From Octopus sinensis (taxonomy: Eukaryota), in the NCBI RefSeq assembly GCF_006345805.1, contig NC_042997.1, forward strand, positions 84,258,001 through 84,322,000: 64,000 nucleotides of DNA. The letters are read 5' to 3'. A program made the translations under genes and the position numbers. Of the stretch, positions 1-61,083 are shown piece by piece. A model generated the notes under the pieces. The model was given only the letters and a program-made list of their open reading frames with translations, was not told the origin of the DNA and did no database searches. Positions within the stretch are counted from its first letter, which is position 1. Every line of letters starts with the position of its first letter.

Positions 1-283
1 CGGTCTCTTTTTGCCGAACCGCAAAGTGACGGGGACGTAAACACACCAGCATTGGTTGTCAAGCAATGCTAGAGGAACAAACACAAACACACACGCATAC
101 ATATATATACATATATATGACAGGCTTCTTTCAGTTTCCGTCTACCAAATCCACTCACAAGGCATTGGTCGGCCCGGGGCTATACCAGAAGGCACTTGCC
201 CAAGATGCCACGCAGTGGGATTGAACCCGGAACCATGTGGTTGGTTAGCAAGCTACTTACCACACAGCCACTCCTGCGCCTAT
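1..283 (-). mobile_element. tRNA-derived SINE family 1, truncated by window edge; carries the intact (empty) target site AAGTAGCTTGCTAAC at 244-258
   Basis: Reverse complement reads ATAGGCGCAGGAGTGGCTGTGTGGTAAGTAGCTTGCTAACCAACCACATGGTTCCGGGTTCAATCCC (A box, B box), then a CORE-like TTGGGCAAGTG and an internal TA/TG tract. Many homologous copies in the window. Confidence 0.9.
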
Positions 284-669
284 ATATATATATTTATATA
301 TATATATATATAGACTTATGTGTATATATGTTATATATATATATATATATTATATATATAATATATATATATATATACACACACACACACGTACATATAT
401 GTGTGTGTCTGTGTATACAAACTCACACATACACACACAAGAATTCTTAAACATACTCATCAATTTCGTTGTTTTTTATTCTTCTAATACTTTCTGTTAT
501 TGGACTGCGGCCATGGCTGAATAACATCTTAAAAGTTTTTGTTTTCTTTCGTCGATCATGTTGACAGTTGTATGTATTTCATAGGCTCACTAATTTACAT
601 TTTGGGTCATAATGCTAGTTCGTAAGCCGGTACACATACACACCATCATACACGCCCACATGTGATGCG

Positions 670-6178: not shown

Positions 6179-6237
6179 TCATTCACTCTTTCTCTCTCTC
6201 GGTATATATATATTCCTTTATTCTTTTATTCTTTTAC

Positions 6238-6630
6238 TTATTTCAGTCATTTTGACTGCGGCCATGCTGGAGAACGGCCTTTAGTCGAACAAATCGACCC
6301 CAGAACATATTCTTCCGTCAGCTGTAATCTCAGCTTCCCTTATCATTTTAGTACTTATTCTATCGGTCTCTTTCGCCGAACCGCTAAGCTACGGGTACGT
6401 AAGCATACCAACATCGGTTGTCTAGCGATAGTGAGAGACAAACACAGACACACAAACACAATTGTATATACATATATACAATGAGCTTTTTTTAGCATCC
6501 ATCTACTAAATCCACTCACAAGGCTTTGGTCAGTCCGCGGCTATAGTAGAAAACATTTGCCTTAGGTGCCACGCAGTGGGACTGTGCCCGGACCCATGTA
6601 GTTGGGAAGTAAGCTTCTTACCACAGAGTC
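6238..6630 (-). mobile_element. SINE family 1, near full length
   Basis: Tail (TCAGTCATTTTGACTGCGGCCATGCTGGAG), internal CA/TA tract, CORE and head all present in reverse orientation. Confidence 0.85.
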
Positions 6631-6644
6631 ATACACACACATAT

Positions 6645-12119: not shown

Positions 12120-12219
12120 NNNNNNNNNNNNNNNNNNNNNNNNNNNNNNNNNNNNNNNNNNNNNNNNNNNNNNNNNNNNNNNNNNNNNNNNNNNNNNNNN
12201 NNNNNNNNNNNNNNNNNNN
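12120..12219. other. Assembly gap (100 N)
   Basis: Run of N. Confidence 1.
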
Positions 12220-46160: not shown

Positions 46161-46301
46161 CAGGAGTGGCTGTGTGGTAAGTAGCCTGCTTACCAACCAC
46201 ACAGTTCCGGGAAAGTGTCTTCTACTATAGCCTCGGGCCGACCAAACCTTGTGAGTGGATTTGGTAGACGGAAACTGAAAGATGCCTGTCGTATATATAG
46301 T

Positions 46302-46344
<43 letters not shown>

Positions 46345-46567
46345 TGTGTGTGTTTGTGTGTGTGTGTTTGTCCCCCCAACATCGCTTGACAACCGATGCT
46401 GGTATGTTTACGTCCCCGTTACTTAGCGGTTCAGCAAAAGGGACCGATAGAATAAGTACTAGGCTTACAAAGAATAAAACCTGGGGTCGATTTGCTCGAC
46501 TAAAAGGCAGTGCTCCAGCATGGCCGCAGTCAAATGACTGAAACAAGTAAAACAGAGTAAAAGAGAG
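46161..46567 (+). mobile_element. SINE family 1, near full length, B-box region deleted
   Basis: CAGGAGTGGCTGTGTGGTAAGTAGCCTGCTTACC..., internal TG tract, tail AAACAAGTAAAACAGAGTAAAAGAG. Confidence 0.85.
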
Positions 46568-46678
46568 TTCCATTAATGTCTTGTAATTATAATTTTCTAA
46601 TTTGTGGTACATTTTCTGGTTTTGTGACACTCAGCTATACAAAGGTGATACTTGAACAACTAATTAGAACGTATGAGC

Positions 46679-51436: not shown

Positions 51437-52999
51437 TAGAAAAAAAAAGAAAAATGCGCCAAAGTAACCATGAAAAGAGGAAAACTAGTTAAGAGTAACA
51501 ACATCACACTAGATAAAACCAATGAAATAAAAGAATTAGACCAAAGCCAAACTTACAAATACTTAGGAATCCATGAACTAGATAAGACACAACACACACA
51601 AATGAAAGAGAAAATAAAAAAAGAATATTATAGACGAGTTAGATCAATACTAAAAACAGAGCTCAATGCTAAAAACAAGATAATAGGTATCAACACTTTA
51701 GCTGTCCCAGTTATAAGTTACAGCTACAATATCCTTAACTGGACACGAAATGAACTGTCCAAAATAGATAGGAAAACAAGAAAAATAATGACAGGATCTA
51801 GGATGCATCACCCAAAATCTGACATAGAGAAAGACTATATATACAACGTATAGAAGGTGGTAGAGGCCTTATACAGCTGGAAAACTACTATAAAATAACC
51901 ACCATAGGACTGCAAAAATATCTACTTCAGGAGGAAGGAAAACTGATCCAGATAGCAGCAAAACACGAGCAAAACAAAAAACTTCTCAGTATTTAAGGAA
52001 GCTGACAAATACAAACAAGAAATCATACCACCTAATAAACATGAAGAAGAAAAAGAAGAAGATGAAGAAACAACAAAAGCTATAAAACAAATGAAATCCA
52101 AACTAAAAATAGAACAGCAACGAACCATGATAAAACGATGGCAAGAAAAGCCCCTTCATGGTAAATACTGCATTAAACTAAACGCAAAAGAAATAGACAA
52201 AGAAAAATCCCAGCAATGGTTGAGAAGCTCAGGACTCAAAGCAGAAACAGAGGGATTTTTAATTGCAGCACAAGACCAAAGCCTCCCCACCAGAAATTAC
52301 CAAAAACATGTAATGAAAAGAAATATTACAAGTAACTGCAGAATATGTGGAGATGGACAAGAAACAATAAATCATATTATCTCTAGCTGCCCAGTCCTGG
52401 CTAAGAAGGAATATATTCACAGACATGACAGAGTTGGAACCTACATACATTGGAAGCAATGCCAACACTATGGAATAACAACAGGAAAAGATGGTATAGG
52501 CACACACCAGAAAGGTCACAGAAAACGAGAAAGCAACCATACTCTGGGATATGCCGATACACACAAATAGAGAAATTAAGGCCAACAGACCAGATATAGT
52601 TGTCAGAGATCATGAAGAAAAAAAATGCCTTCAAATTGATGTATCAATACCGGCAGATGACAACGTGTCTCTAAAAGAAATGGAGAAACTCTCAAAATAC
52701 AAAGACCTGGAAATAGAGGTAACTAGAATGTGGAATCTGAAAACAGAAACAATTCCTATCATAGTAGTGCATTAGGCATGATAAAAAATATTCAGACAAA
52801 TACATAACAAAAACACCAGGACTTACAAACATATATAACATACAGAAAATTGCACTACTAGGCACTGCACACATCCTACGCAGAACACTTTCCATACAAT
52901 AACCATCAGAGCATCACAACAAATCACAGCACATACCCAAGGCACACAGAGCTGCGCTCGGTAGTGAAGTGAAAGCACGCTATAAAAATAAAACTACTG
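51435..52999 (+). mobile_element. R4/Dong-type RLE LINE, 5'-truncated (RT C-terminus, CCHC, RLE, 3' UTR), frameshifted
   Basis: TYKYLGI, INTLAVPVISY, HHPKSD, GGRGL, LHGKY, ETEGFLIAAQDQ, CRICGDGQETINHIISSCP, RHDRV, RPDIVV..DVSIP..EKLSKYKDL. Flanked on both sides by (AAT)n. Confidence 0.92.
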
Positions 53000-54766: not shown

Positions 54767-55469
54767 CACACACACACAAACTCACACACACACACACACA
54801 CATATGCACGCACACAAAAACATAAAGATACCTCGCGTTAAGGAATTATTGATTTCATTAAAATAACAATTTTACTGTAATGTGGAATTACTCAAAGCAA
54901 AACATATTTTCGCATCAATTTCCTCTTCACTGAATGAAGTTATTGCAAAATAGGGTTCGCGCTACAGGTGTTCACATTACAGAAAGATTTTCTTGGAGGT
55001 ATCGTGGTGTATGTCTTTGTTTGTGTGTGAGTGACTATATGCGTGTCAGTGAGTGTATACATATTTTTTATTGTAGATGTATAGGTGTATAAGTATATAA
55101 GGAAATGAGGACACATACACACATACACCTCCCCACCTTATATTTACACAAACTGGTGCATGCCCTAAATTTTTCCAAATATCAAAGACGTTTCTGAAAA
55201 TATTTTAGCCGTATATTTCATATTTTCTTAATCCAGAGTGAAGTTGTATATTCTTCAGTAGAAATAGAAACAAATAAGTAGGCAAATACTTGAGCGAAGC
55301 AAAGAAATACATAATGAAATAAATATATTTCACAACAAGTAATAAATAAATAGCTAACTATATAGGCGCAGGAGTGGCTGTGTGGTAAGTAGCTTTCTCA
55401 CCGAACGGACGTGTTTTTTTTCGCTCCGGCAAATGTCACGTTTTAACGTGAATTACTGAACATTTTACG

Positions 55470-56060
55470 TCAACAGGTGGGGCGTTCGAATATTGTTGGA
55501 AGCCTAGTGATGTTTATTGCCTGCCGTTAATACTTTTTAACATTAACAACGTTACTTAGTGTTAATAATTTTTGCGCGTAATAAACTTCACTTTGCTTCG
55601 GATATATTTTTTCTACCTGTTGGCGTATTTAAAAGTCTCACTTTTTAGAGAGAAATTGTGTTTTTTGAGGAAGGCGTAGCCCCTCCTCAGAAATATTTTT
55701 GACTCATTGGAGTACCAATTTTCACACTTGGATTACCACACGTGGAATATTGAACTGTTTGGCAACAGCAGGTAGGATTTTTTGAATGTTTTTGGAGGCT
55801 TAGCGAGGTTTATTGCCTGCCATTAATACTTTTTGGCGTCAACGTTAATTAGCGTTAATAATTTTTTGCGAATAATAAACTTCGCTTTGCTTCGGATATA
55901 TTTTTCTGCCTGTTGTATTTAAAATCTCACGTTTTAGTGAGAAGTGTGTTTTTTGAAGAGGCGTAGCCCACATCAAAAATAATTCGATTCATTGGAGCAC
56001 CAATTTCGCTTTGGATTACCACACGTGGAATATTGCACCTTTGGATTACCAGGAGGCACC
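55470..56060 (+). repeat. Two ~297-bp tandem monomers in the 5' UTR of element A
   Basis: TTATTGCCTGCC..TAATACTTTT...CTTTGCTTCGGATATATTTTT...GGCGTAGCCC...TTGGATTACCACACGTGGAATATTG at ~55514-55755 and ~55811-56036. Confidence 0.85.
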
Positions 56061-56311
56061 AAGGATATTCGTGGATTGTTTTTACAAGCACCAGAATTAC
56101 CAAGGATTGCCGTGACGTTTGGCCTGGACTACCTTTTCGGCCAAAAAAAAAAATATTTCTTTGCCACATTTGAACTTCTTCCTCTAGCTATCCTTCATTT
56201 GAACTCCGAACTGTTTTTATTGTAACTCTCGTTTCCATTTTGTTTTTGCTTCTCTCTTTCTGTCACTTTTGTGTTTTTCCTATTCGAACTGTATTAATAT
56301 TTTTGTTAAAA

Positions 56312-57298
56312 ATGGCAAAGGAACTGATTGTTTGGGAGCTGGAAGCTCCCCAAAAATATGTCAAACAGCTCGAGGATAAGACCGTGGTACTGAGGACTTA
56401 TTCAAGGTTGCTCAACGCTATCATGGTTTTTCCGAAGGCGAAAATTATTGAAGAGCTGGCAGACCACATGCCAGCCGTGAAATATATCACGCGGGGAGCC
56501 AAATACGCAACGGTTTGGTTGCTGTTTGACTCCCCAAAAGATGCTTGCAATTTTGCAAGCCAGCCCATTGAGGGCAAAGAAATCTTGTTTCTCCCTAGTT
56601 ATAAGGGAGAAAAATTGACAAAACTATGGGTCTGCGGCCTGCCACCCGGCATTGAACCCGAGTGGATAGAAGACTCTATCCGCCGGGGTCTGGGTGACAG
56701 GGACGCAAAAATCCTAAATGTCAATATACTGCCTGCGGCTGATTGGGAAGGGTCTAAGGCTACCTTAACCCTATGGACCCAGTCAGCCAAGAGTCTGGTT
56801 TTGCCGGACTTTTTGAGAATGGCCGGGTCCAAGTATCCGGTGATGCTCGAGGGACGCCCCCCCAAGTGTCACCTGTGTTTGGAGACCGGCCACATCAAGA
56901 AGAGCTGCCCCAGGGACCAGAGTAGGATCCTGGAGCGGCTGATATTGGAGCCTCTCCCTGCCTCTTCAATGGAGGGAGAGAAGCAAAGTGAGGAGGGAGA
57001 AGAATCCTCCTCCAAAAGAAAAAGACAGGTGGGGAGCAATGGCGACCCACCAAAGGACCTGAAAGCTGCGGGAGAGGAGAACCCGGTGCGCACAGCTCCG
57101 GAACCTCAGCCTCCCGTGGCCCAGGGCCAGAAGAAAAAGAAAAAAAGAGAAACGGAGCGTCGCCGGCGGATTGCTACACGCAGACGGCGGTTCCCGAGTA
57201 TCCCGGGTCCTCTCAGGCGGGTGTGCCGCCTGAGGGACAATTCGTGGAAGATTTTGTGTTCCTCTTTTTTAAAGGAAAAAAGGTGGAAAGCACTATAA
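56312..57298 (+). CDS. ORF1p-like nucleic-acid-binding protein (two RRM-like regions, one CCHC knuckle, basic Lys tract)
   Basis: ATG at 56312. RNP-like ATVWLLF and LWVCGLPPGIEPEWI; CHLCLETGHIKKSC is C-x2-C-x4-H-x4-C. Homologous to the copy B frames. Confidence 0.8.
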   Translation: MAKELIVWELEAPQKYVKQLEDKTVVLRTYSRLLNAIMVFPKAKIIEELADHMPAVKYITRGAKYATVWLLFDSPKDACNFASQPIEGKEILFLPSYKGEKLTKLWVCGLPPGIEPEWIEDSIRRGLGDRDAKILNVNILPAADWEGSKATLTLWTQSAKSLVLPDFLRMAGSKYPVMLEGRPPKCHLCLETGHIKKSCPRDQSRILERLILEPLPASSMEGEKQSEEGEESSSKRKRQVGSNGDPPKDLKAAGEENPVRTAPEPQPPVAQGQKKKKKRETERRRRIATRRRRFPSIPGPLRRVCRLRDNSWKILCSSFLKEKRWKAL

Positions 57299-57519
57299 GA
57301 AAAGTGAGAAAGAGAGGACGTTGGGAGGTAATCCAGTCCTGTACGGAGAACCCCGAGTGGCCTTCGCAGTTAGCTGCGGGGGTCGTGGGAAGGGTTGATC
57401 TACACAGGATCGTGGGTTCCTGCCCAGCGGACTCCTTCGAGATTATACCTCTGGATACCGGCCTGACCAGCGGGTATTGCCTCAATGAGGCAAGAGCAAT
57501 GGTCGGCCGGGTCACATAG
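57181..57519 (+). CDS. Conserved C-terminal module of ORF1 in the -1 frame (frame open 56992-57519)
   Basis: VPPEGQFVEDFVFLFFKG...TENPEWPSQ...YCLNEARAMV aligns with copy B VPPTKELNVLVLFYRG...TQDPEWPPQ...YVLREAWLMV. Confidence 0.6.
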   Translation, partial: QTAVPEYPGSSQAGVPPEGQFVEDFVFLFFKGKKVESTIRKVRKRGRWEVIQSCTENPEWPSQLAAGVVGRVDLHRIVGSCPADSFEIIPLDTGLTSGYCLNEARAMVGRVT

Positions 57520-57853
57520 GCGGTGTAACATCCTTGTAACATGTGGAAGAGGAGGTTTATTGCCTCCTCTAAAATTTGTAAAATTTGTAATTCAATGTTA
57601 ATTCAAACATTTTTGCAACAGGTTGAAGAGGAGGTTTATTGCTTCCTCTAAAATTTGTAATTTGTAATCATTGTATTAAATGTAATTATTGAACATTGTT
57701 TTAGAGAAGCGAGAGTCGGCGGGCGCTTTTTGACTTCTCCCATCACCATCTTCATCCACCACCACCATCATCCATTAATGTCCTTGTCCAGCCCGTAGCT
57801 ACTCTGTGTGCTGCCCTAGTGGAAAAATTGTTGAAATAAAGTAGCTTGCTAAC

Positions 57854-60121
57854 ACACATGCACAGTTAGTCAGTTGCTTCCTGTTCAGCCAGAGTGGACG
57901 CGAGTCAACCAGCTCCGTCCAATTAAAGAAAAAAGACCAAAAACGGAAAGTTGTCGAGGTAAGTGATTTTGTTTATTGTGAGTTGGGCATAATTTATTGC
58001 GTGCCAATTATTATTTCAGTAAGTTGTGTCCAACTCTGAGACAATTCGCCTGCTCTCGGCGGCTGCCGTTTTTGTGTTCATTGAAAAAAAAAGAAAAAAC
58101 AGTGGAGGGGCGTATCCTCGGAATTCAATACAGTTACTGTTAAAATTACCGTTGGCGGTAGCCAGTGCTGTGTTTGGGTTTGTTGAATTTATTCCCTTGT
58201 CAGAGTACTTCGCAAGAAAATTATAAAAATAAGCCACTATTGGATTACCTTTCGGACCCATTTTTGTGGAGGTTGTGTTGCAGTTGCGGCGTTCCAGGTT
58301 CAACCCAGGCCGGGAGTACCGCAAGGCCAGAATATTTTTGCTGTGTTTTTTCTGTTTATTAACTTTCTTTTGAACTTCATTTAACCCCCCCCCCCTTTTG
58401 TTTTTTTTCTTTATTGCGACTTTCCGTTGATTTCTTCCCTTCTGTTGTGCTTTCTCCTTTTTGTTTTTTCAAAAATCTATCAAATTTTATTTGGACTTTT
58501 GAACTTTTTTCTTCTTGCTTTTTGAGTTTAATTTGAATATATTTAAAAAAAAACATGGCAATGAAAAATAACAAAATTTTGGAATGGGAAATCATACCAC
58601 CTAAAAAGTGGTTAAAAGACCGTGAAGATAGGACGGTGGTGTTGAGAACCTACTCCAAGGCACTCGACACCATCGCCCTATTCGAAAAGACGGCAATTGA
58701 AAAGGAGTTGGAAGAGTATTTGCCAACAATTAAATTCATTTCCAGGGGTGTCAAATATGCAACGGTGTGATTGCTATTTGACACCCCTGAAGAGGCTTGC
58801 AAATTTGCTAGCAAACCCCTGGAGGGTAAGGAAATCTTATTCCTGCCCACGTACAAAAAAAAAAGAAATTGATGAAAGCTTGGATTTGCGGGCTGCCACC
58901 CGACATAGAACCCGAGTGGATAGAGGAGACTATCCGCCGGGGTCTGGGTGGCAGCGAAACTAAGCTCCTTAATGTAAAAGTTCTTCCTGCGGCTGCTTGG
59001 GTTGGGTCAAAAGCAATTTTGACCCTGTGGACCCAATCAGCCAATCTGGTTCTTCCAGATTTTTTGAAAATGGCCGGGTGCAGGTACCCGGTGATGCTTG
59101 AGGGTCGCCCCCCTAAGTGTCATCGGTGCTTGGAGTCCGGCCACATAAGAAGAACTGTCCTCGGGAACAAAATAGGATCCCGGAACAGTTAAGTAAAACC
59201 CCTCTAGAAGAGGGAACGGTAACGGCCGAGAAAGCAGAGGACTCCTCAAACAGAGGCCGAAAGAGGAAGGTGAGCAACAATGGGTGCTCACCAAAGGATA
59301 ATAGGGATGAGGAGAGGAAGGCGAATCTTCCAGCCACGGAGGAGACGCACCCTCCCTCAGTTGAAAAGGGAAAAAAAAAGAAAAAGAGGAAGAAAACGGG
59401 ACATTACCGGCTGTCAGTGTAGCACCGGAATGTCCCGGAACTACGTCGGTTGGGGTTGTGCCACCGACAAGAGAAGGAATACCGTTGGCGGGAACTGTGC
59501 CGCCAACGAAAGAACTGAACGTATTGGTCCTCTTCTATAGAGGAGGAGAAATTGAAAAAAAAAATGATGGAAGAGCACCAGAAGGGAGCACCTTTAGCCT
59601 TCACACAGGACCCCGAATGGCCTCCGCAGATAGCTGTGGAGGCCGTGACGTTCGACGTAACGCTTGGGCTAAAGGAGCTCAATGAAGATTATAGCTTGGT
59701 CCCGGGCGACGCGAACTCGGAACTTGATTACGTTCTGAGGGAGGCGTGGTTGATGGTGGAGGGCGCGGGCACAAGCTATTTCGAGGACGATATGTAATTA
59801 TTGAACTGTTAGTATTAATAATGGACTGCTAAGTCCAAAAATTGAAAAATTGTAAGAGGTTTAATACCTCGTTTTGTATTTTTATTAATAATGGACTGCT
59901 AAGTCCAAAAATTGGAAAAATTGTAAGAGGTTTAATACCTCGTTTTGTGTTTATCTTTAAAAAGAACAATGTTTTAGAGAAGCGAAAGTCGGCGGGCGTT
60001 TTTTGTCTTCTCCCATCCTTATCATCTGTCTTTCATTATCATTCACTTCATTAATGTCCTCGTCCAGCCCGCAAAGCTAACTTAATCTGTGTACTGCCTT
60101 TATGGCAAATGTTTTGAAATA
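57854..60121 (+). mobile_element. ORF1-only non-LTR retroelement, copy B (2268 bp), 15-bp TSD AAGTAGCTTGCTAAC
   Basis: TSD at 57839-57853 and 60122-60136; same ORF1 and conserved 3' end (TTGAAATA) as copy A; no APE, RT or LTR. Confidence 0.85.
58555..59797 (+). pseudogene. Disrupted ORF1 of copy B
   Basis: ATG at 58555; TGG>TGA stop at 58768-58770; frameshifts near 58860, 59145, 59375 and 59560. The reassembled protein aligns with copy A at roughly 65-75% identity over the RRM-CCHC part (counted by eye). Confidence 0.8.
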
Positions 60122-61083
60122 AAGTAGCTTGCTAACCAACCACATGGTTCCGGGTTCAGTCCCACTGCGTGGCATCTTGGGCAAGTGTCTTCTGCTATAG
60201 CCCCGGGCCGACCAATGCCTTGTGAGTGGATTTGGTAGACGGAAACTGAAAGAAGCCTGTCGTATATATGTATATATATGTGTGTGTATATGTGTTTGTG
60301 CGTGTGTGTTTGTGCCCCTAGCATTGCTTGACAACCGATGCTGGTGTGTTTACGTCCCCGTCACTTAGCGGTTCGGCAAAAGAGACCGATAGAATAAGTA
60401 CTGGGCTTACAAAGAATAAGTTCCGGGGTCGATTTACTCGACTAAAGGCGGTGCTCCAGCATGGTCGCAGTCAAATGACTGAAACAAGTAAAAGAGTAAA
60501 AAGAGTAAAAGAGTATATAACCAGGTAAATAAAAAAAAGTAATACAAAAATACACAACGCGTGCCCTGACAGTCTCTTATCTTAAGGGAGATAATTAGTT
60601 CCCGATCAATTCAAGTGGGAGTGAAAGTTTGAATTTTAAATCAAAGAATGATGAAGGTGCAAGAATGTATTTCTATTTTATGTTAGTTTCTTTCTCACAC
60701 ATAAACACATCAAAATTTCTAGTCGTAGATACATAGATAGATCATTGAAACTCAGAATTTATTACACGGAGATGAGCACACAAGTATGGTGTATTGAATT
60801 ATGAGTAGTTTTTATCGTGGATTTAAGTTGATTTTTTTTGTTTCCATTTGGTACATTTTCTGTTCTATTTTGCTCTTAATACTTCCTCTCCACCTTCGCC
60901 TTTTTTTTTGTTTTACTTCTCTTATCTACTTTGCTATTTTTGTTAATATACGTCTCTGAAGCACCTGGTGACCTTTCCACTTTCTATCTATCTCGTTGTT
61001 AACATTGCATATTAAAAAAATAGGCCCACTTTTTGTACGCAAATCGTAAGTACGTACGCGTAAGTTTGTTAGAACGTGTACAT

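What the first reader, a model, noticed from the sequence alone, without database searches (positions are those of the whole stretch)
55363..60514. Two different retroelements inserted at the same nucleotide inside a SINE tRNA-like head: candidate SINE/tRNA-targeting site-specific system
Seen in sequence: SINE head ...GTGTGGT AAGTAGCTT [A, 55396-57838] AAGTAGCTTGCTAAC [B, 57854-60121] AAGTAGCTTGCTAAC CAACCACATGG... (rest of SINE). The intact site is visible in another copy at 244-258. Both 3' junctions are identical (TTGAAATA|AAGTAGCTT), while the TSDs differ (9 and 15 bp). A and B are ~30% divergent in protein, so these are two independent events and not a duplication. The site lies between the Pol III A and B boxes and contains a quasi-palindrome, TAGC-TT-GCTA. 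Established: a fixed 3' junction with variable TSD length is the signature of target-primed reverse transcription; Tx1-clade elements include sequence-specific families (Keno on U2 snRNA, Dewa in tRNA arrays, Kibi/Koshi on microsatellites). Inference: a sequence-specific endonuclease supplied in trans uses an abundant SINE, or the tRNA it derives from, as a safe landing pad. Each insertion separates the host SINE's A and B boxes and regenerates a target.
Basis: partly seen in the sequence, partly recalled or inferred. Interest (0 to 1): 0.92.

Follow-up and report, generated by a model that had tools for sequence, protein, structure and literature searches.

The report
Site-specific retroelements in an octopus SINE
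Two related retroelements that carry only the first LINE gene sit head to tail at the same nucleotide of one octopus SINE, and a third relative in another octopus species starts at the same SINE position, so this is a sequence-targeted retrotransposon family of a well-known kind (Tx1/Keno-like) with a new target.

Summary
One SINE (55365-60513, with its own TATATA duplication) is split after its A-box-like motif by element A (55396-57838) and element B (57854-60121). Both end ...TTGAAATA|AAGTAGCTT, and their target-site duplications are 9 and 15 bp. A and B align only in the ORF and the last ~150 nt (77% DNA identity). Neither has a reverse transcriptase or an endonuclease.

New evidence:
- The only close database relative (Octopus sinensis LOC115225585) sits at a non-orthologous locus and starts right after a SINE head, at AAGTAGCTTGCT(TCC), in the same orientation.
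- The ORF (two RRM-like folds plus a CCHC knuckle, dN/dS 0.12-0.27) is homologous (hhalign E 3e-12) to the ORF1 of metagenomic LINEs. One of these is followed by an APE-like ORF2 start. The other begins inside a U2 snRNA gene, as Keno of the Tx1 clade does.

Best reading: an ORF1-only, non-autonomous, Tx1-like family inserted by target-primed reverse transcription at one site of a SINE head, with the enzyme supplied in trans. Tx1-clade families that target other transposons, with tandem insertions sandwiching a duplication, are already described, so this is a new member rather than a new kind. Genome-wide flanks could not be tabulated here.

The parts
55359..55364 (.). Left copy of the host SINE's own target-site duplication (TATATA)
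   Evidence: Same hexamer at 60514-60519, directly after the SINE tail.
55365..55386 (+). Host SINE, 5' part of the head up to the insertion point. Includes the A-box-like TGGCTGTGTGG at 55375-55385.
   Evidence: Aligns to other SINE copies in the window. Motif coordinates.
55387..55395 (+). Target-site duplication of A, left copy (AAGTAGCTT). The next six bases, TCTCAC, match GCTAAC at 4 of 6 positions.
55396..57838 (+). Element A (2443 bp), an ORF1-only LINE-type retroelement. 5' UTR 55396-56311, with two ~270-bp monomers (55485-55755 and 55781-56038, 83% identical). ORF 56312-57298. Conserved C-terminal coding segment in the -1 frame, running to the stop at 57517-57519. 3' UTR 57520-57838, with a 65-bp tandem repeat (57527-57591 and 57606-57668) and the conserved tail 57691-57838 (predicted hairpin 57704-57739). 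Ends ...TTGAAATA.
   Evidence: No RT or EN domain. The ORF has no lesion other than the shared -1 offset.
57839..57853 (+). Middle copy of the target, AAGTAGCTTGCTAAC. Its first 9 nt are the right duplication copy of A; all 15 nt are the left duplication copy of B.
57854..60121 (+). Element B (2268 bp), a second subfamily and decayed. 5' UTR 57854-58554. ORF remnants 58555-59797: an in-frame TGA at 58768-58770 where A and C have TGG, a +2 shift in the A-run near 58855-58866, a 3-nt deletion near 59043, a 1-nt deletion near 59149, and a further shift in the C-terminal part. 3' UTR 59798-60121, with a 70-bp tandem repeat (59813-59881 and 59883-59952) and the conserved tail 59964-60121. Ends ...TTGAAATA.
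60122..60136 (+). Right duplication copy of B (AAGTAGCTTGCTAAC), continuous with the rest of the SINE
60137..60513 (+). Rest of the host SINE: B-box-like GGTTCAGTCCC at 60153-60163, the body, and an (AGTAAAAG)n-like tail
60514..60519 (.). Right copy of the host SINE's own target-site duplication (TATATA)
244..258 (-). Unoccupied target site in another copy of the same SINE subfamily (SINE copy 1-301, minus strand)

Best explanation
A and B are two diverged members of one family of non-autonomous, ORF1-only non-LTR retrotransposons from an octopus genome. The family integrates by target-primed reverse transcription at one defined site in the head of an abundant SINE.

Proposed mechanism:
1. A sequence-specific endonuclease/reverse transcriptase nicks the bottom strand at 5'-AAGCTACTT^ACCACAC-3'. 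On the top strand this is between GTGTGGT and AAGTAGC, one base after the A-box-like motif. The enzyme is encoded elsewhere, most likely by an autonomous Tx1-clade-like LINE that shares the conserved ~150-nt 3' tail.
2. It primes cDNA synthesis on the element's 3' end (...UUGAAAUA).
3. The top strand is cut 9-15 nt downstream, which produces the variable duplication.

The duplication restores the sequence around the nick, so the site can be hit again. That gives the head-to-tail A-B array, in which the decayed B was probably first and the intact-looking A second.

What is shown: the junctions, the duplications, the independence of A, B and C, the absence of RT and EN, selection on the ORF, and homology of the ORF to the ORF1 of Keno-like LINEs. 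What is inferred: the trans-acting partner, the nick position as an enzymatic specificity, the order of insertion, and the 'safe landing pad' rationale.
For: - Junctions and duplications are exact and far beyond chance, and the empty-site join restores a continuous SINE.
- A and B share only the ORF core and the 3' tail at 77% identity, so they are separate events.
- The only close relative in 5.8 billion proteins, O. sinensis LOC115225585 (P0001, 59% identity), lies at a locus that shares only repeats with the window. It begins immediately after a SINE head...GGCTGTGTGGTAAGTAGCTTGCT(TCC)|TGTGCATGCG..., in the same orientation, and its 5' end is homologous to B's 5' end.
- All three insertions have the SINE's orientation.
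- No RT or EN is present. The ORF has a CCHC knuckle and a tandem-RRM-like predicted fold.
- dN/dS among A, B and C is 0.12-0.27, so the lineages diverged while the ORF was functional.
- hhalign of the A/B/C ORF against the P0031/P0095 family gives probability 97.6% and E 3e-12 over 188 columns. P0031's ORF1 is followed 11 nt later by an ORF that starts MALILASLNVRGMKE...LETH, which looks like an APE N-terminus by eye. P0095's element starts after the first ~47 nt of a U2 snRNA gene (Rfam U2 53 bits against a cut-off of 46). That is the hallmark of Keno, an APE-type Tx1-clade family (PMC4494074, PMC4640811).
- The published Tx1-clade behaviour matches: targets include other transposons, TSDs are ~16 bp, tandem insertions sandwich a TSD, and 3' boundaries are precise while 5' boundaries vary.
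- SINEs make up about 11.6% of an octopus genome (PMC13282606). By my own arithmetic, two further random insertions matching the same nucleotide and orientation of a ~400-bp SINE would have a probability of about 1e-8.
Against: - There are only three insertions, and the third (C) has lost its 3' part, so the fixed 3' junction rests on two cases.
- No copy with an ORF2 and no partner sharing the 3' tail was found, so the endonuclease is hypothetical.
- Clade assignment rests on ORF1 homology at ~21% identity to unnamed metagenomic elements, not on an RT phylogeny.
- The APE reading of the 45-residue ORF2 start is by eye; Pfam gave no hit.
- Other SINE copies in the window with an exact or near-exact target are unoccupied (244-258; 46176 with one mismatch). 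This fits a low-copy family but does not demonstrate preference.
- The order 'B first' rests only on the relative decay of the two elements.
Confidence: 0.8

Rival explanations
1. Hitchhiking. One ancestral insertion into a master SINE was later amplified together with the SINE as a composite unit, so the shared junctions reflect common descent and not repeated targeting.
For: All three copies are flanked by SINE head sequence. The same concern was raised and had to be tested for SINEU-3 and Mariner-N4_AMi (PMC4494074). The window composite is flanked by a single SINE duplication.
Against: - A tandem A-B array with the 15-mer present three times needs two insertion events into one SINE copy.
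- The 5' junctions differ (9 versus 15 nt).
- The duplication copies are identical although A and B are ~23% diverged in their alignable parts.
- A and B contain 34 and 23 runs of four or more T on the sense strand, the first only 19 nt into A. A Pol III SINE transcript therefore could not carry them.
- The SINE head next to C differs from the window head at 5 of 21 positions, and C is not at an orthologous locus.
Confidence: 0.05
2. A LINE enzyme without sequence specificity, with only an L1-like preference for TT|A steps. The coincidence of sites reflects the sheer abundance of this SINE plus a local hot spot in DNA structure or chromatin.
For: The nick (bottom strand CTACTT^AC) follows a TT, loosely like L1 endonuclease sites. 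SINEs make up ~11.6% of an octopus genome. Only three insertions were seen.
Against: Same nucleotide, same orientation, three of three copies, across two species. My arithmetic gives a chance probability of about 1e-8. The second insertion went into the regenerated site and not elsewhere in 5 kb of AT-rich sequence. The ORF1 type belongs with target-specific Keno-like elements.
Confidence: 0.08
3. Chimeric cDNA or recombination. Template switching between SINE RNA and element RNAs during reverse transcription, or gene conversion between SINE copies, created and spread the head-element-body structure.
For: Template switching onto small RNAs is documented for L1 and is discussed for SINEU heads.
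Against: It would need four switches at exact positions, and these would have to produce perfect 9- and 15-nt direct repeats of target sequence. Ordinary target-site duplication explains the same facts with two events. No 3' poly(A) or SINE-tail priming signature is seen at the internal junctions.
Confidence: 0.03
4. Assembly artefact. The A+B block is a mis-join of two separate SINE-embedded copies through the shared SINE or target sequence.
For: The region is highly repetitive and the window has one 100-N gap (12120-12219). No read-level data were available.
Against: The gap is 43 kb away. The A-to-B join is only a 15-bp shared sequence, and assemblers do not normally bridge on that. Even if A and B came from two loci, each would still be an insertion at the same SINE nucleotide, so the main conclusion would stand.
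Confidence: 0.03

Closest known systems
Tx1-clade target-specific LINEs that insert into other transposons: Tx1L into Tx1D (piggyBac-type) in Xenopus; Tx1-Mar into Mariner-N4_AMi, and other crocodilian Tx1 families into LTR retrotransposons and Harbinger elements (PMC4494074)
   Same: A fixed site inside another repeat family, a fixed orientation, duplications of about 9-16 bp, tandem insertions sandwiching a duplication, and non-autonomous passengers sharing the target (SINEU-3). The ORF1 here is homologous to that of a Keno-like element.
   Different: The target is the Pol III promoter region of a SINE. I found no report of such a target in the searchable literature. The copies seen have no ORF2, so clade membership by RT cannot be shown.
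Keno (Tx1 clade, U2 snRNA genes), Dewa (tRNA gene arrays) and Mutsu (5S rRNA), from Kojima & Fujiwara 2004. Cited from my own knowledge and through PMC4494074, PMC4640811 and PMC5035012.
   Same: APE-type LINEs that cut one site inside a small-RNA gene. Here the target is a small-RNA-gene-derived head. The related metagenomic element L003 lies in a U2 gene.
   Different: Here the interrupted sequence is a retroposed, degenerate tRNA-like SINE head, not a functional gene (no tRNA call). Whether true tRNA genes are hit is unknown.
HAL1 (half-L1) of mammals, and HeT-A of Drosophila telomeres
   Same: LINE derivatives that keep only ORF1 (gag) and rely on ORF2/RT in trans (HAL1: PMC5753468; HeT-A from my own knowledge). 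HeT-A also has a fixed type of target and forms head-to-tail arrays.
   Different: HAL1 has no target specificity. HeT-A attaches to chromosome ends without an endonuclease cut. Here an internal sequence-specific nick with duplications is implied.
R1/R2, TRAS/SART and other classical site-specific LINEs
   Same: Precise 3' junctions with variable 5' junctions, multicopy targets, and the safe-haven logic (PMC4640811, PMC5035012).
   Different: They differ in clade, ORF1 type and targets (rDNA, telomeric repeats).
Position-specific integration near tRNA genes: Dictyostelium TRE5/TRE3, yeast Ty3 (from my own knowledge)
   Same: Association with Pol III-type promoters (A and B boxes).
   Different: Those elements insert at a distance outside the gene through contacts with Pol III factors. 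Here the break is at one nucleotide inside the A/B-box interval, which points to recognition of DNA sequence.

Membership tests
Target-specific non-LTR retrotransposon (general class) | Independent copies are flanked by the same target sequence in the same orientation | tested here: met
   A, B (window) and C (O. sinensis L001, non-orthologous) all follow ...GGCTGTGTGGT AAGTAGCTT... of a SINE head in the SINE's orientation. The sample is only three.
Target-specific non-LTR retrotransposon (general class) | Precise 3' junction, variable 5' junction or duplication | tested here: met
   Both 3' junctions are TTGAAATA|AAGTAGCTT. The 5' junctions lie 9, 15 and 12-15 nt into the target.
Target-specific non-LTR retrotransposon (general class) | More than 20% of genomic copies are flanked by the target (criterion used in PMC4494074) | not testable with these tools
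   The searchable DNA collections hold no octopus DNA, and exact-protein look-ups found nothing.
Tx1 clade | Reverse transcriptase groups with Tx1-clade RTs in a phylogeny | not testable with these tools
   A and B encode no RT, and no autonomous relative could be retrieved.
Tx1 clade | ORF2 with an APE-type endonuclease | tested here: not met
   A and B have no ORF2, so they can at most be non-autonomous derivatives. A distant relative (L002) has an ORF2 start that looks like an APE N-terminus by eye, but Pfam does not call it.
Tx1 clade | ORF1 homologous to that of a recognised Tx1-type (Keno-like) element | tested here: met
   hhalign gives probability 97.6% and E 3e-12 against the P0031/P0095 family. 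P0095's element is inserted in a U2 snRNA gene. The evidence is indirect, because those elements are unnamed metagenomic contigs.
ORF1-only non-autonomous LINE derivative (HAL1-like) | Keeps 5' UTR, ORF1 and 3' tail, lacks ORF2, and ORF1 is under selection | tested here: met
   The architecture is the same in A and B. dN/dS is 0.12-0.27. The 3' tail is conserved at 77% while the adjacent UTR is unalignable.
ORF1-only non-autonomous LINE derivative (HAL1-like) | An autonomous partner shares the 3' tail | not testable with these tools
   No other sequence with this tail occurs in the window or in L001, and no genome was accessible.
tRNA-derived SINE (host element) | Internal Pol III A and B boxes at tRNA-like spacing | tested here: met
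   TGGCTGTGTGG lies at SINE nt 11-21 and GGTTCAGTCCC at nt 54-64 of the restored SINE. At least ten copies occur in the window.
tRNA-derived SINE (host element) | The head is recognisable as a tRNA | tested here: not met
   ARAGORN at default settings finds none. Rfam gives no tRNA hit even at E<=10 on the intact copy. ARAGORN in relaxed mode gives only an implausible fold that uses flanking bases.
Pol III-factor-guided, position-specific integration (TRE5/Ty3 type) | Insertion outside the gene at a characteristic distance | tested here: not met
   The insertions are at one nucleotide inside the head, between the A and B boxes.

The most novel reading that the evidence does not exclude
A long-lived lineage of gag-only retroelements specialises, genome-wide and across octopus species, on one nucleotide of the Pol III promoter region of the dominant octopus SINE. 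Each insertion would disable a SINE copy and recreate its own landing site. The lineage would depend on an as yet undescribed Tx1-like endonuclease with a new DNA specificity, and possibly also cut the parental tRNA genes. It would be a three-layer parasite system: a LINE enzyme, an ORF1-only passenger, and a SINE as the target.
Probability: 0.45. Interest if true: 0.6.

Novelty: new member of a known kind. Interest (0 to 1): 0.45.

Why it matters
- It would add SINE heads to the list of targets of sequence-specific LINEs. That list currently holds rDNA, snRNA, tRNA and 5S genes, microsatellites, telomeres, DNA transposons and LTR elements.
- It would show a transposon that parasitises, and inactivates, the most abundant repeat of octopus genomes.
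- It points to an APE-type endonuclease with a new 15-20-bp specificity. That is of practical interest for programmable or safe-harbour integration.
- It offers a second example, alongside HAL1 and HeT-A, of a gag-only LINE lineage that persists under selection.
- For annotation, it explains why a transposon ORF is listed as a protein-coding gene (LOC115225585) in O. sinensis.

Tried and rejected
- **Other copies in the window or in L001.** None were found, even with word size 7.
- **More copies from public data.** Three protein searches returned only P0001 plus two distant metagenomic proteins. DNA-pattern and protein scans of the metagenome, prokaryote-genome and viral collections found neither the element nor even the SINE head, so those collections hold no octopus DNA. 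Exact look-ups of window ORFs, including one spanning the B/SINE junction, found nothing.
- **A fourth copy.** P0011 (XP_029639579.1, O. sinensis) carries a B-like N-terminus, but its locus was not fetched because the look-up tool admits only proteins returned by the search for homologous proteins.
- **B's or C's 5' end contains SINE-derived sequence.** Rejected: local alignment scores are no better than shuffles.
- **The C-terminal segment of A/B is homologous to the C-terminal domain of the wider ORF1 family.** No signal.
- **Ribozyme or other known RNA at the 5' ends.** Rfam found nothing at gathering thresholds.
- **Pfam on the short ORF2 starts of L002 and L003.** No call. The L003 downstream 'gene' is another ORF1 start, not an ORF2.
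- **Sequence search of solved structures.** It detects only the CCHC knuckle.
- **Covariation in the 3' tail.** Two sequences are too few. Only one-sided changes were seen.

Full report
**Observation.** Reading 55200-60700 and exact-string searches confirm the finding base for base. The layout is:
- a SINE head ending ...GGCTGTGTGGT (to 55386);
- AAGTAGCTT (55387-55395);
- element A (55396-57838, ending TTGAAATA);
- AAGTAGCTTGCTAAC (57839-57853);
- element B (57854-60121, ending TTGAAATA);
- AAGTAGCTTGCTAAC (60122-60136);
- the rest of the SINE.

The 15-mer and the 17-mer junction have expectations of 0.00 and 0.06 in dinucleotide shuffles. Joining the two flanks restores a SINE that aligns without a gap across the join to the uninterrupted copy at 1-301 on the minus strand (91% identity), where the unoccupied site is at 244-258. 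The composite is bounded by the SINE's own 6-bp duplication, TATATA (55359-55364 and 60514-60519). An A-box-like TGGCTGTGTGG ends one base before the break, and a B-box-like GGTTCAGTCCC lies 31 nt after it in the restored SINE. The head is nevertheless too degenerate to be called a tRNA by ARAGORN or Rfam.

**What A and B are.** Each has a long 5' UTR, one ORF region of about 1.2 kb and a 3' UTR of about 320 nt, and neither has any reverse transcriptase or endonuclease.
- They align only in the ORF core (77% over 493 nt) and in the last 150-160 nt (77%). The 5' UTRs and proximal 3' UTRs are unrelated. They are therefore two subfamilies and two separate events.
- A's ORF is open. B has an in-frame stop, several frameshifts and a 3-nt deletion. 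B is probably the older insertion, and A probably entered the upstream regenerated site.
- The protein has a CCHC knuckle. A low-confidence model (pLDDT 63) has two beta-alpha-beta-beta-alpha-beta units that Foldseek matches to tandem-RRM proteins. This is the layout expected of a LINE ORF1 protein with RRM and CCHC domains (from my own knowledge of ORF1p types).
- dN/dS among A, B and the O. sinensis copy is 0.12-0.27. The lineages therefore diverged while the ORF was needed.
- The conserved 3' tail contains a predicted 19-bp hairpin. With only two sequences there is no covariation evidence.

**A third, independent insertion.** The only close relative among 5.8 billion proteins is Octopus sinensis LOC115225585 (P0001, 59% identity). 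Its locus (L001, chromosome CM016886.1) shares only repeats with the window, so it is not orthologous. There the element (C) begins directly after a SINE head...GGCATGGCTGTGTGGTAAGTAGCTTGCT(TCC)|TGTGCATGCGTTGATTAGTTGCTTCC..., in the SINE's orientation. Its first bases are homologous to B's first bases. C's 3' part is missing: there is a breakpoint near L001 10972, and no remainder lies within 10 kb. A fourth, B-like copy is implied by a chimeric O. sinensis gene model (P0011), but its locus could not be retrieved.

**Which kind of LINE.** An exhaustive profile search found 88 relatives of the ORF. Most named ones come from Octopus and Argonauta, and there are three long metagenomic proteins. 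Profile-profile comparison with that metagenomic family gives probability 97.6% and E 3e-12 over 188 columns, covering both RRM-like units and the knuckle. In one contig (L002) this ORF1 is followed 11 nt later by an ORF starting MALILASLNVRGMKE...LETH, which by eye looks like the N-terminus of an APE-type endonuclease, although Pfam does not call it. In the other contig (L003) the element starts after the first ~47 nt of a U2 snRNA gene (Rfam U2, 53 bits against a cut-off of 46). An APE-type LINE at a fixed site in U2 is the definition of Keno, a Tx1-clade family (PMC4494074, PMC4640811). It cannot be proven without an RT.

**Mechanism.** The fixed 3' junction places the first (bottom-strand) nick at 5'-AAGCTACTT^ACCACAC-3'. 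The variable 5' junctions place the top-strand break 9-15 nt downstream. This is the pattern described for other site-specific LINEs, which have precise 3' and variable 5' boundaries. A and B lack ORF2, so the enzyme must come from an autonomous partner, most plausibly one that shares the conserved tail. The tandem array shows that the duplication recreates a usable site, exactly as described for tandem SINEU-3 and Tx1-Mar insertions 'sandwiching a TSD' in a Mariner transposon.

**Rivals.**
- *Amplification as a SINE-plus-insert composite.* This is contradicted by the tandem array, by the different 5' junctions, by identical duplication copies next to elements ~23% diverged in their alignable parts, and by 34 and 23 Pol III terminator-like T-runs inside A and B.
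- *Random insertion.* SINEs are about 11.6% of an octopus genome. My arithmetic puts two further hits on the same nucleotide and strand at about 1e-8.
- *Template-switch chimeras.* These need four exact switches.
- *A mis-join.* This would still leave two insertions at the same SINE nucleotide.

**Novelty.** Target-specific LINEs are a classic class. The Tx1 clade in particular is known to target other transposons: Tx1D, Mariner-N4_AMi, LTR elements and Harbinger. ORF1-only derivatives are known as HAL1. L1-Tx1 families are reported as recently active in O. vulgaris. I found no report of a LINE family that targets a SINE head, but Repbase could not be consulted.

**Limits.** The decisive test is the genome-wide tabulation of 3' flanks, together with the search for the ORF2-bearing partner. 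It could not be run, because none of the accessible DNA collections contains octopus sequence.

Noticed in passing
window 57120-57300 (A), 59365-59422 (B); L001 10762-10846 (C): In all three copies the N-terminal reading frame stops soon after an A-rich run, and a conserved peptide (LPAV...PE(C/Y)PG...V(I/L/F)(F/L)F(K/R/H)GG...) continues in the -1 frame. This could be a native -1 frameshift or slippage site. It could equally be recurrent 1-nt deletions, biological or assembly errors, in a homopolymer. C has no canonical slippery heptamer.
   Followed up: partly
window 55485-55755 / 55781-56038; 57527-57591 / 57606-57668; 59813-59881 / 59883-59952: Internal tandem repeats: two ~270-bp monomers in A's 5' UTR (83% identical), and unrelated 65-70-bp tandem repeats with small hairpins in the 3' UTRs of A (88%) and B (97%).
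   Followed up: no
window 51450-52900 (+): A 5'-truncated fragment of an unrelated LINE ORF2 C-terminus (RT thumb region; Pfam zf-RVT, E 2e-6, at 52091-52570). It has no similarity to the tails of A or B.
   Followed up: partly
L003 1-3200 (JGI metagenome 3300030226): A Keno-like element in a U2 snRNA gene. After the ORF1 stop the contig runs straight into more 5'-UTR-type monomers and a second ORF1 start instead of an ORF2. This is either a tandem or rearranged ORF1-only unit, or an assembly loop through repeats.
   Followed up: partly
L001 10001-10846 and 3129-20846 (O. sinensis CM016886.1): The transposon ORF of copy C is annotated as a protein-coding gene (LOC115225585). It lies within the span of another called gene on the same strand, probably in an intron. 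A second model (XP_029639579.1, 'K02A2.6-like') fuses a B-like ORF1 N-terminus to an integrase-like sequence.
   Followed up: partly
window 60170-60200 and the other SINE copies (e.g. 1-301, 6207-6631, 46161-46568): The host SINE carries a CTTGGGCAAGTG... stretch that recalls the CORE domain of CORE-SINEs such as MIR and octopus OR1 (recalled from memory; OR1 is listed as a CORE-SINE in PMC4824008). The window has at least ten copies or fragments of this SINE group.
   Followed up: no
window 12120-12219: A run of 100 N (assembly gap), far from the finding.
   Followed up: no
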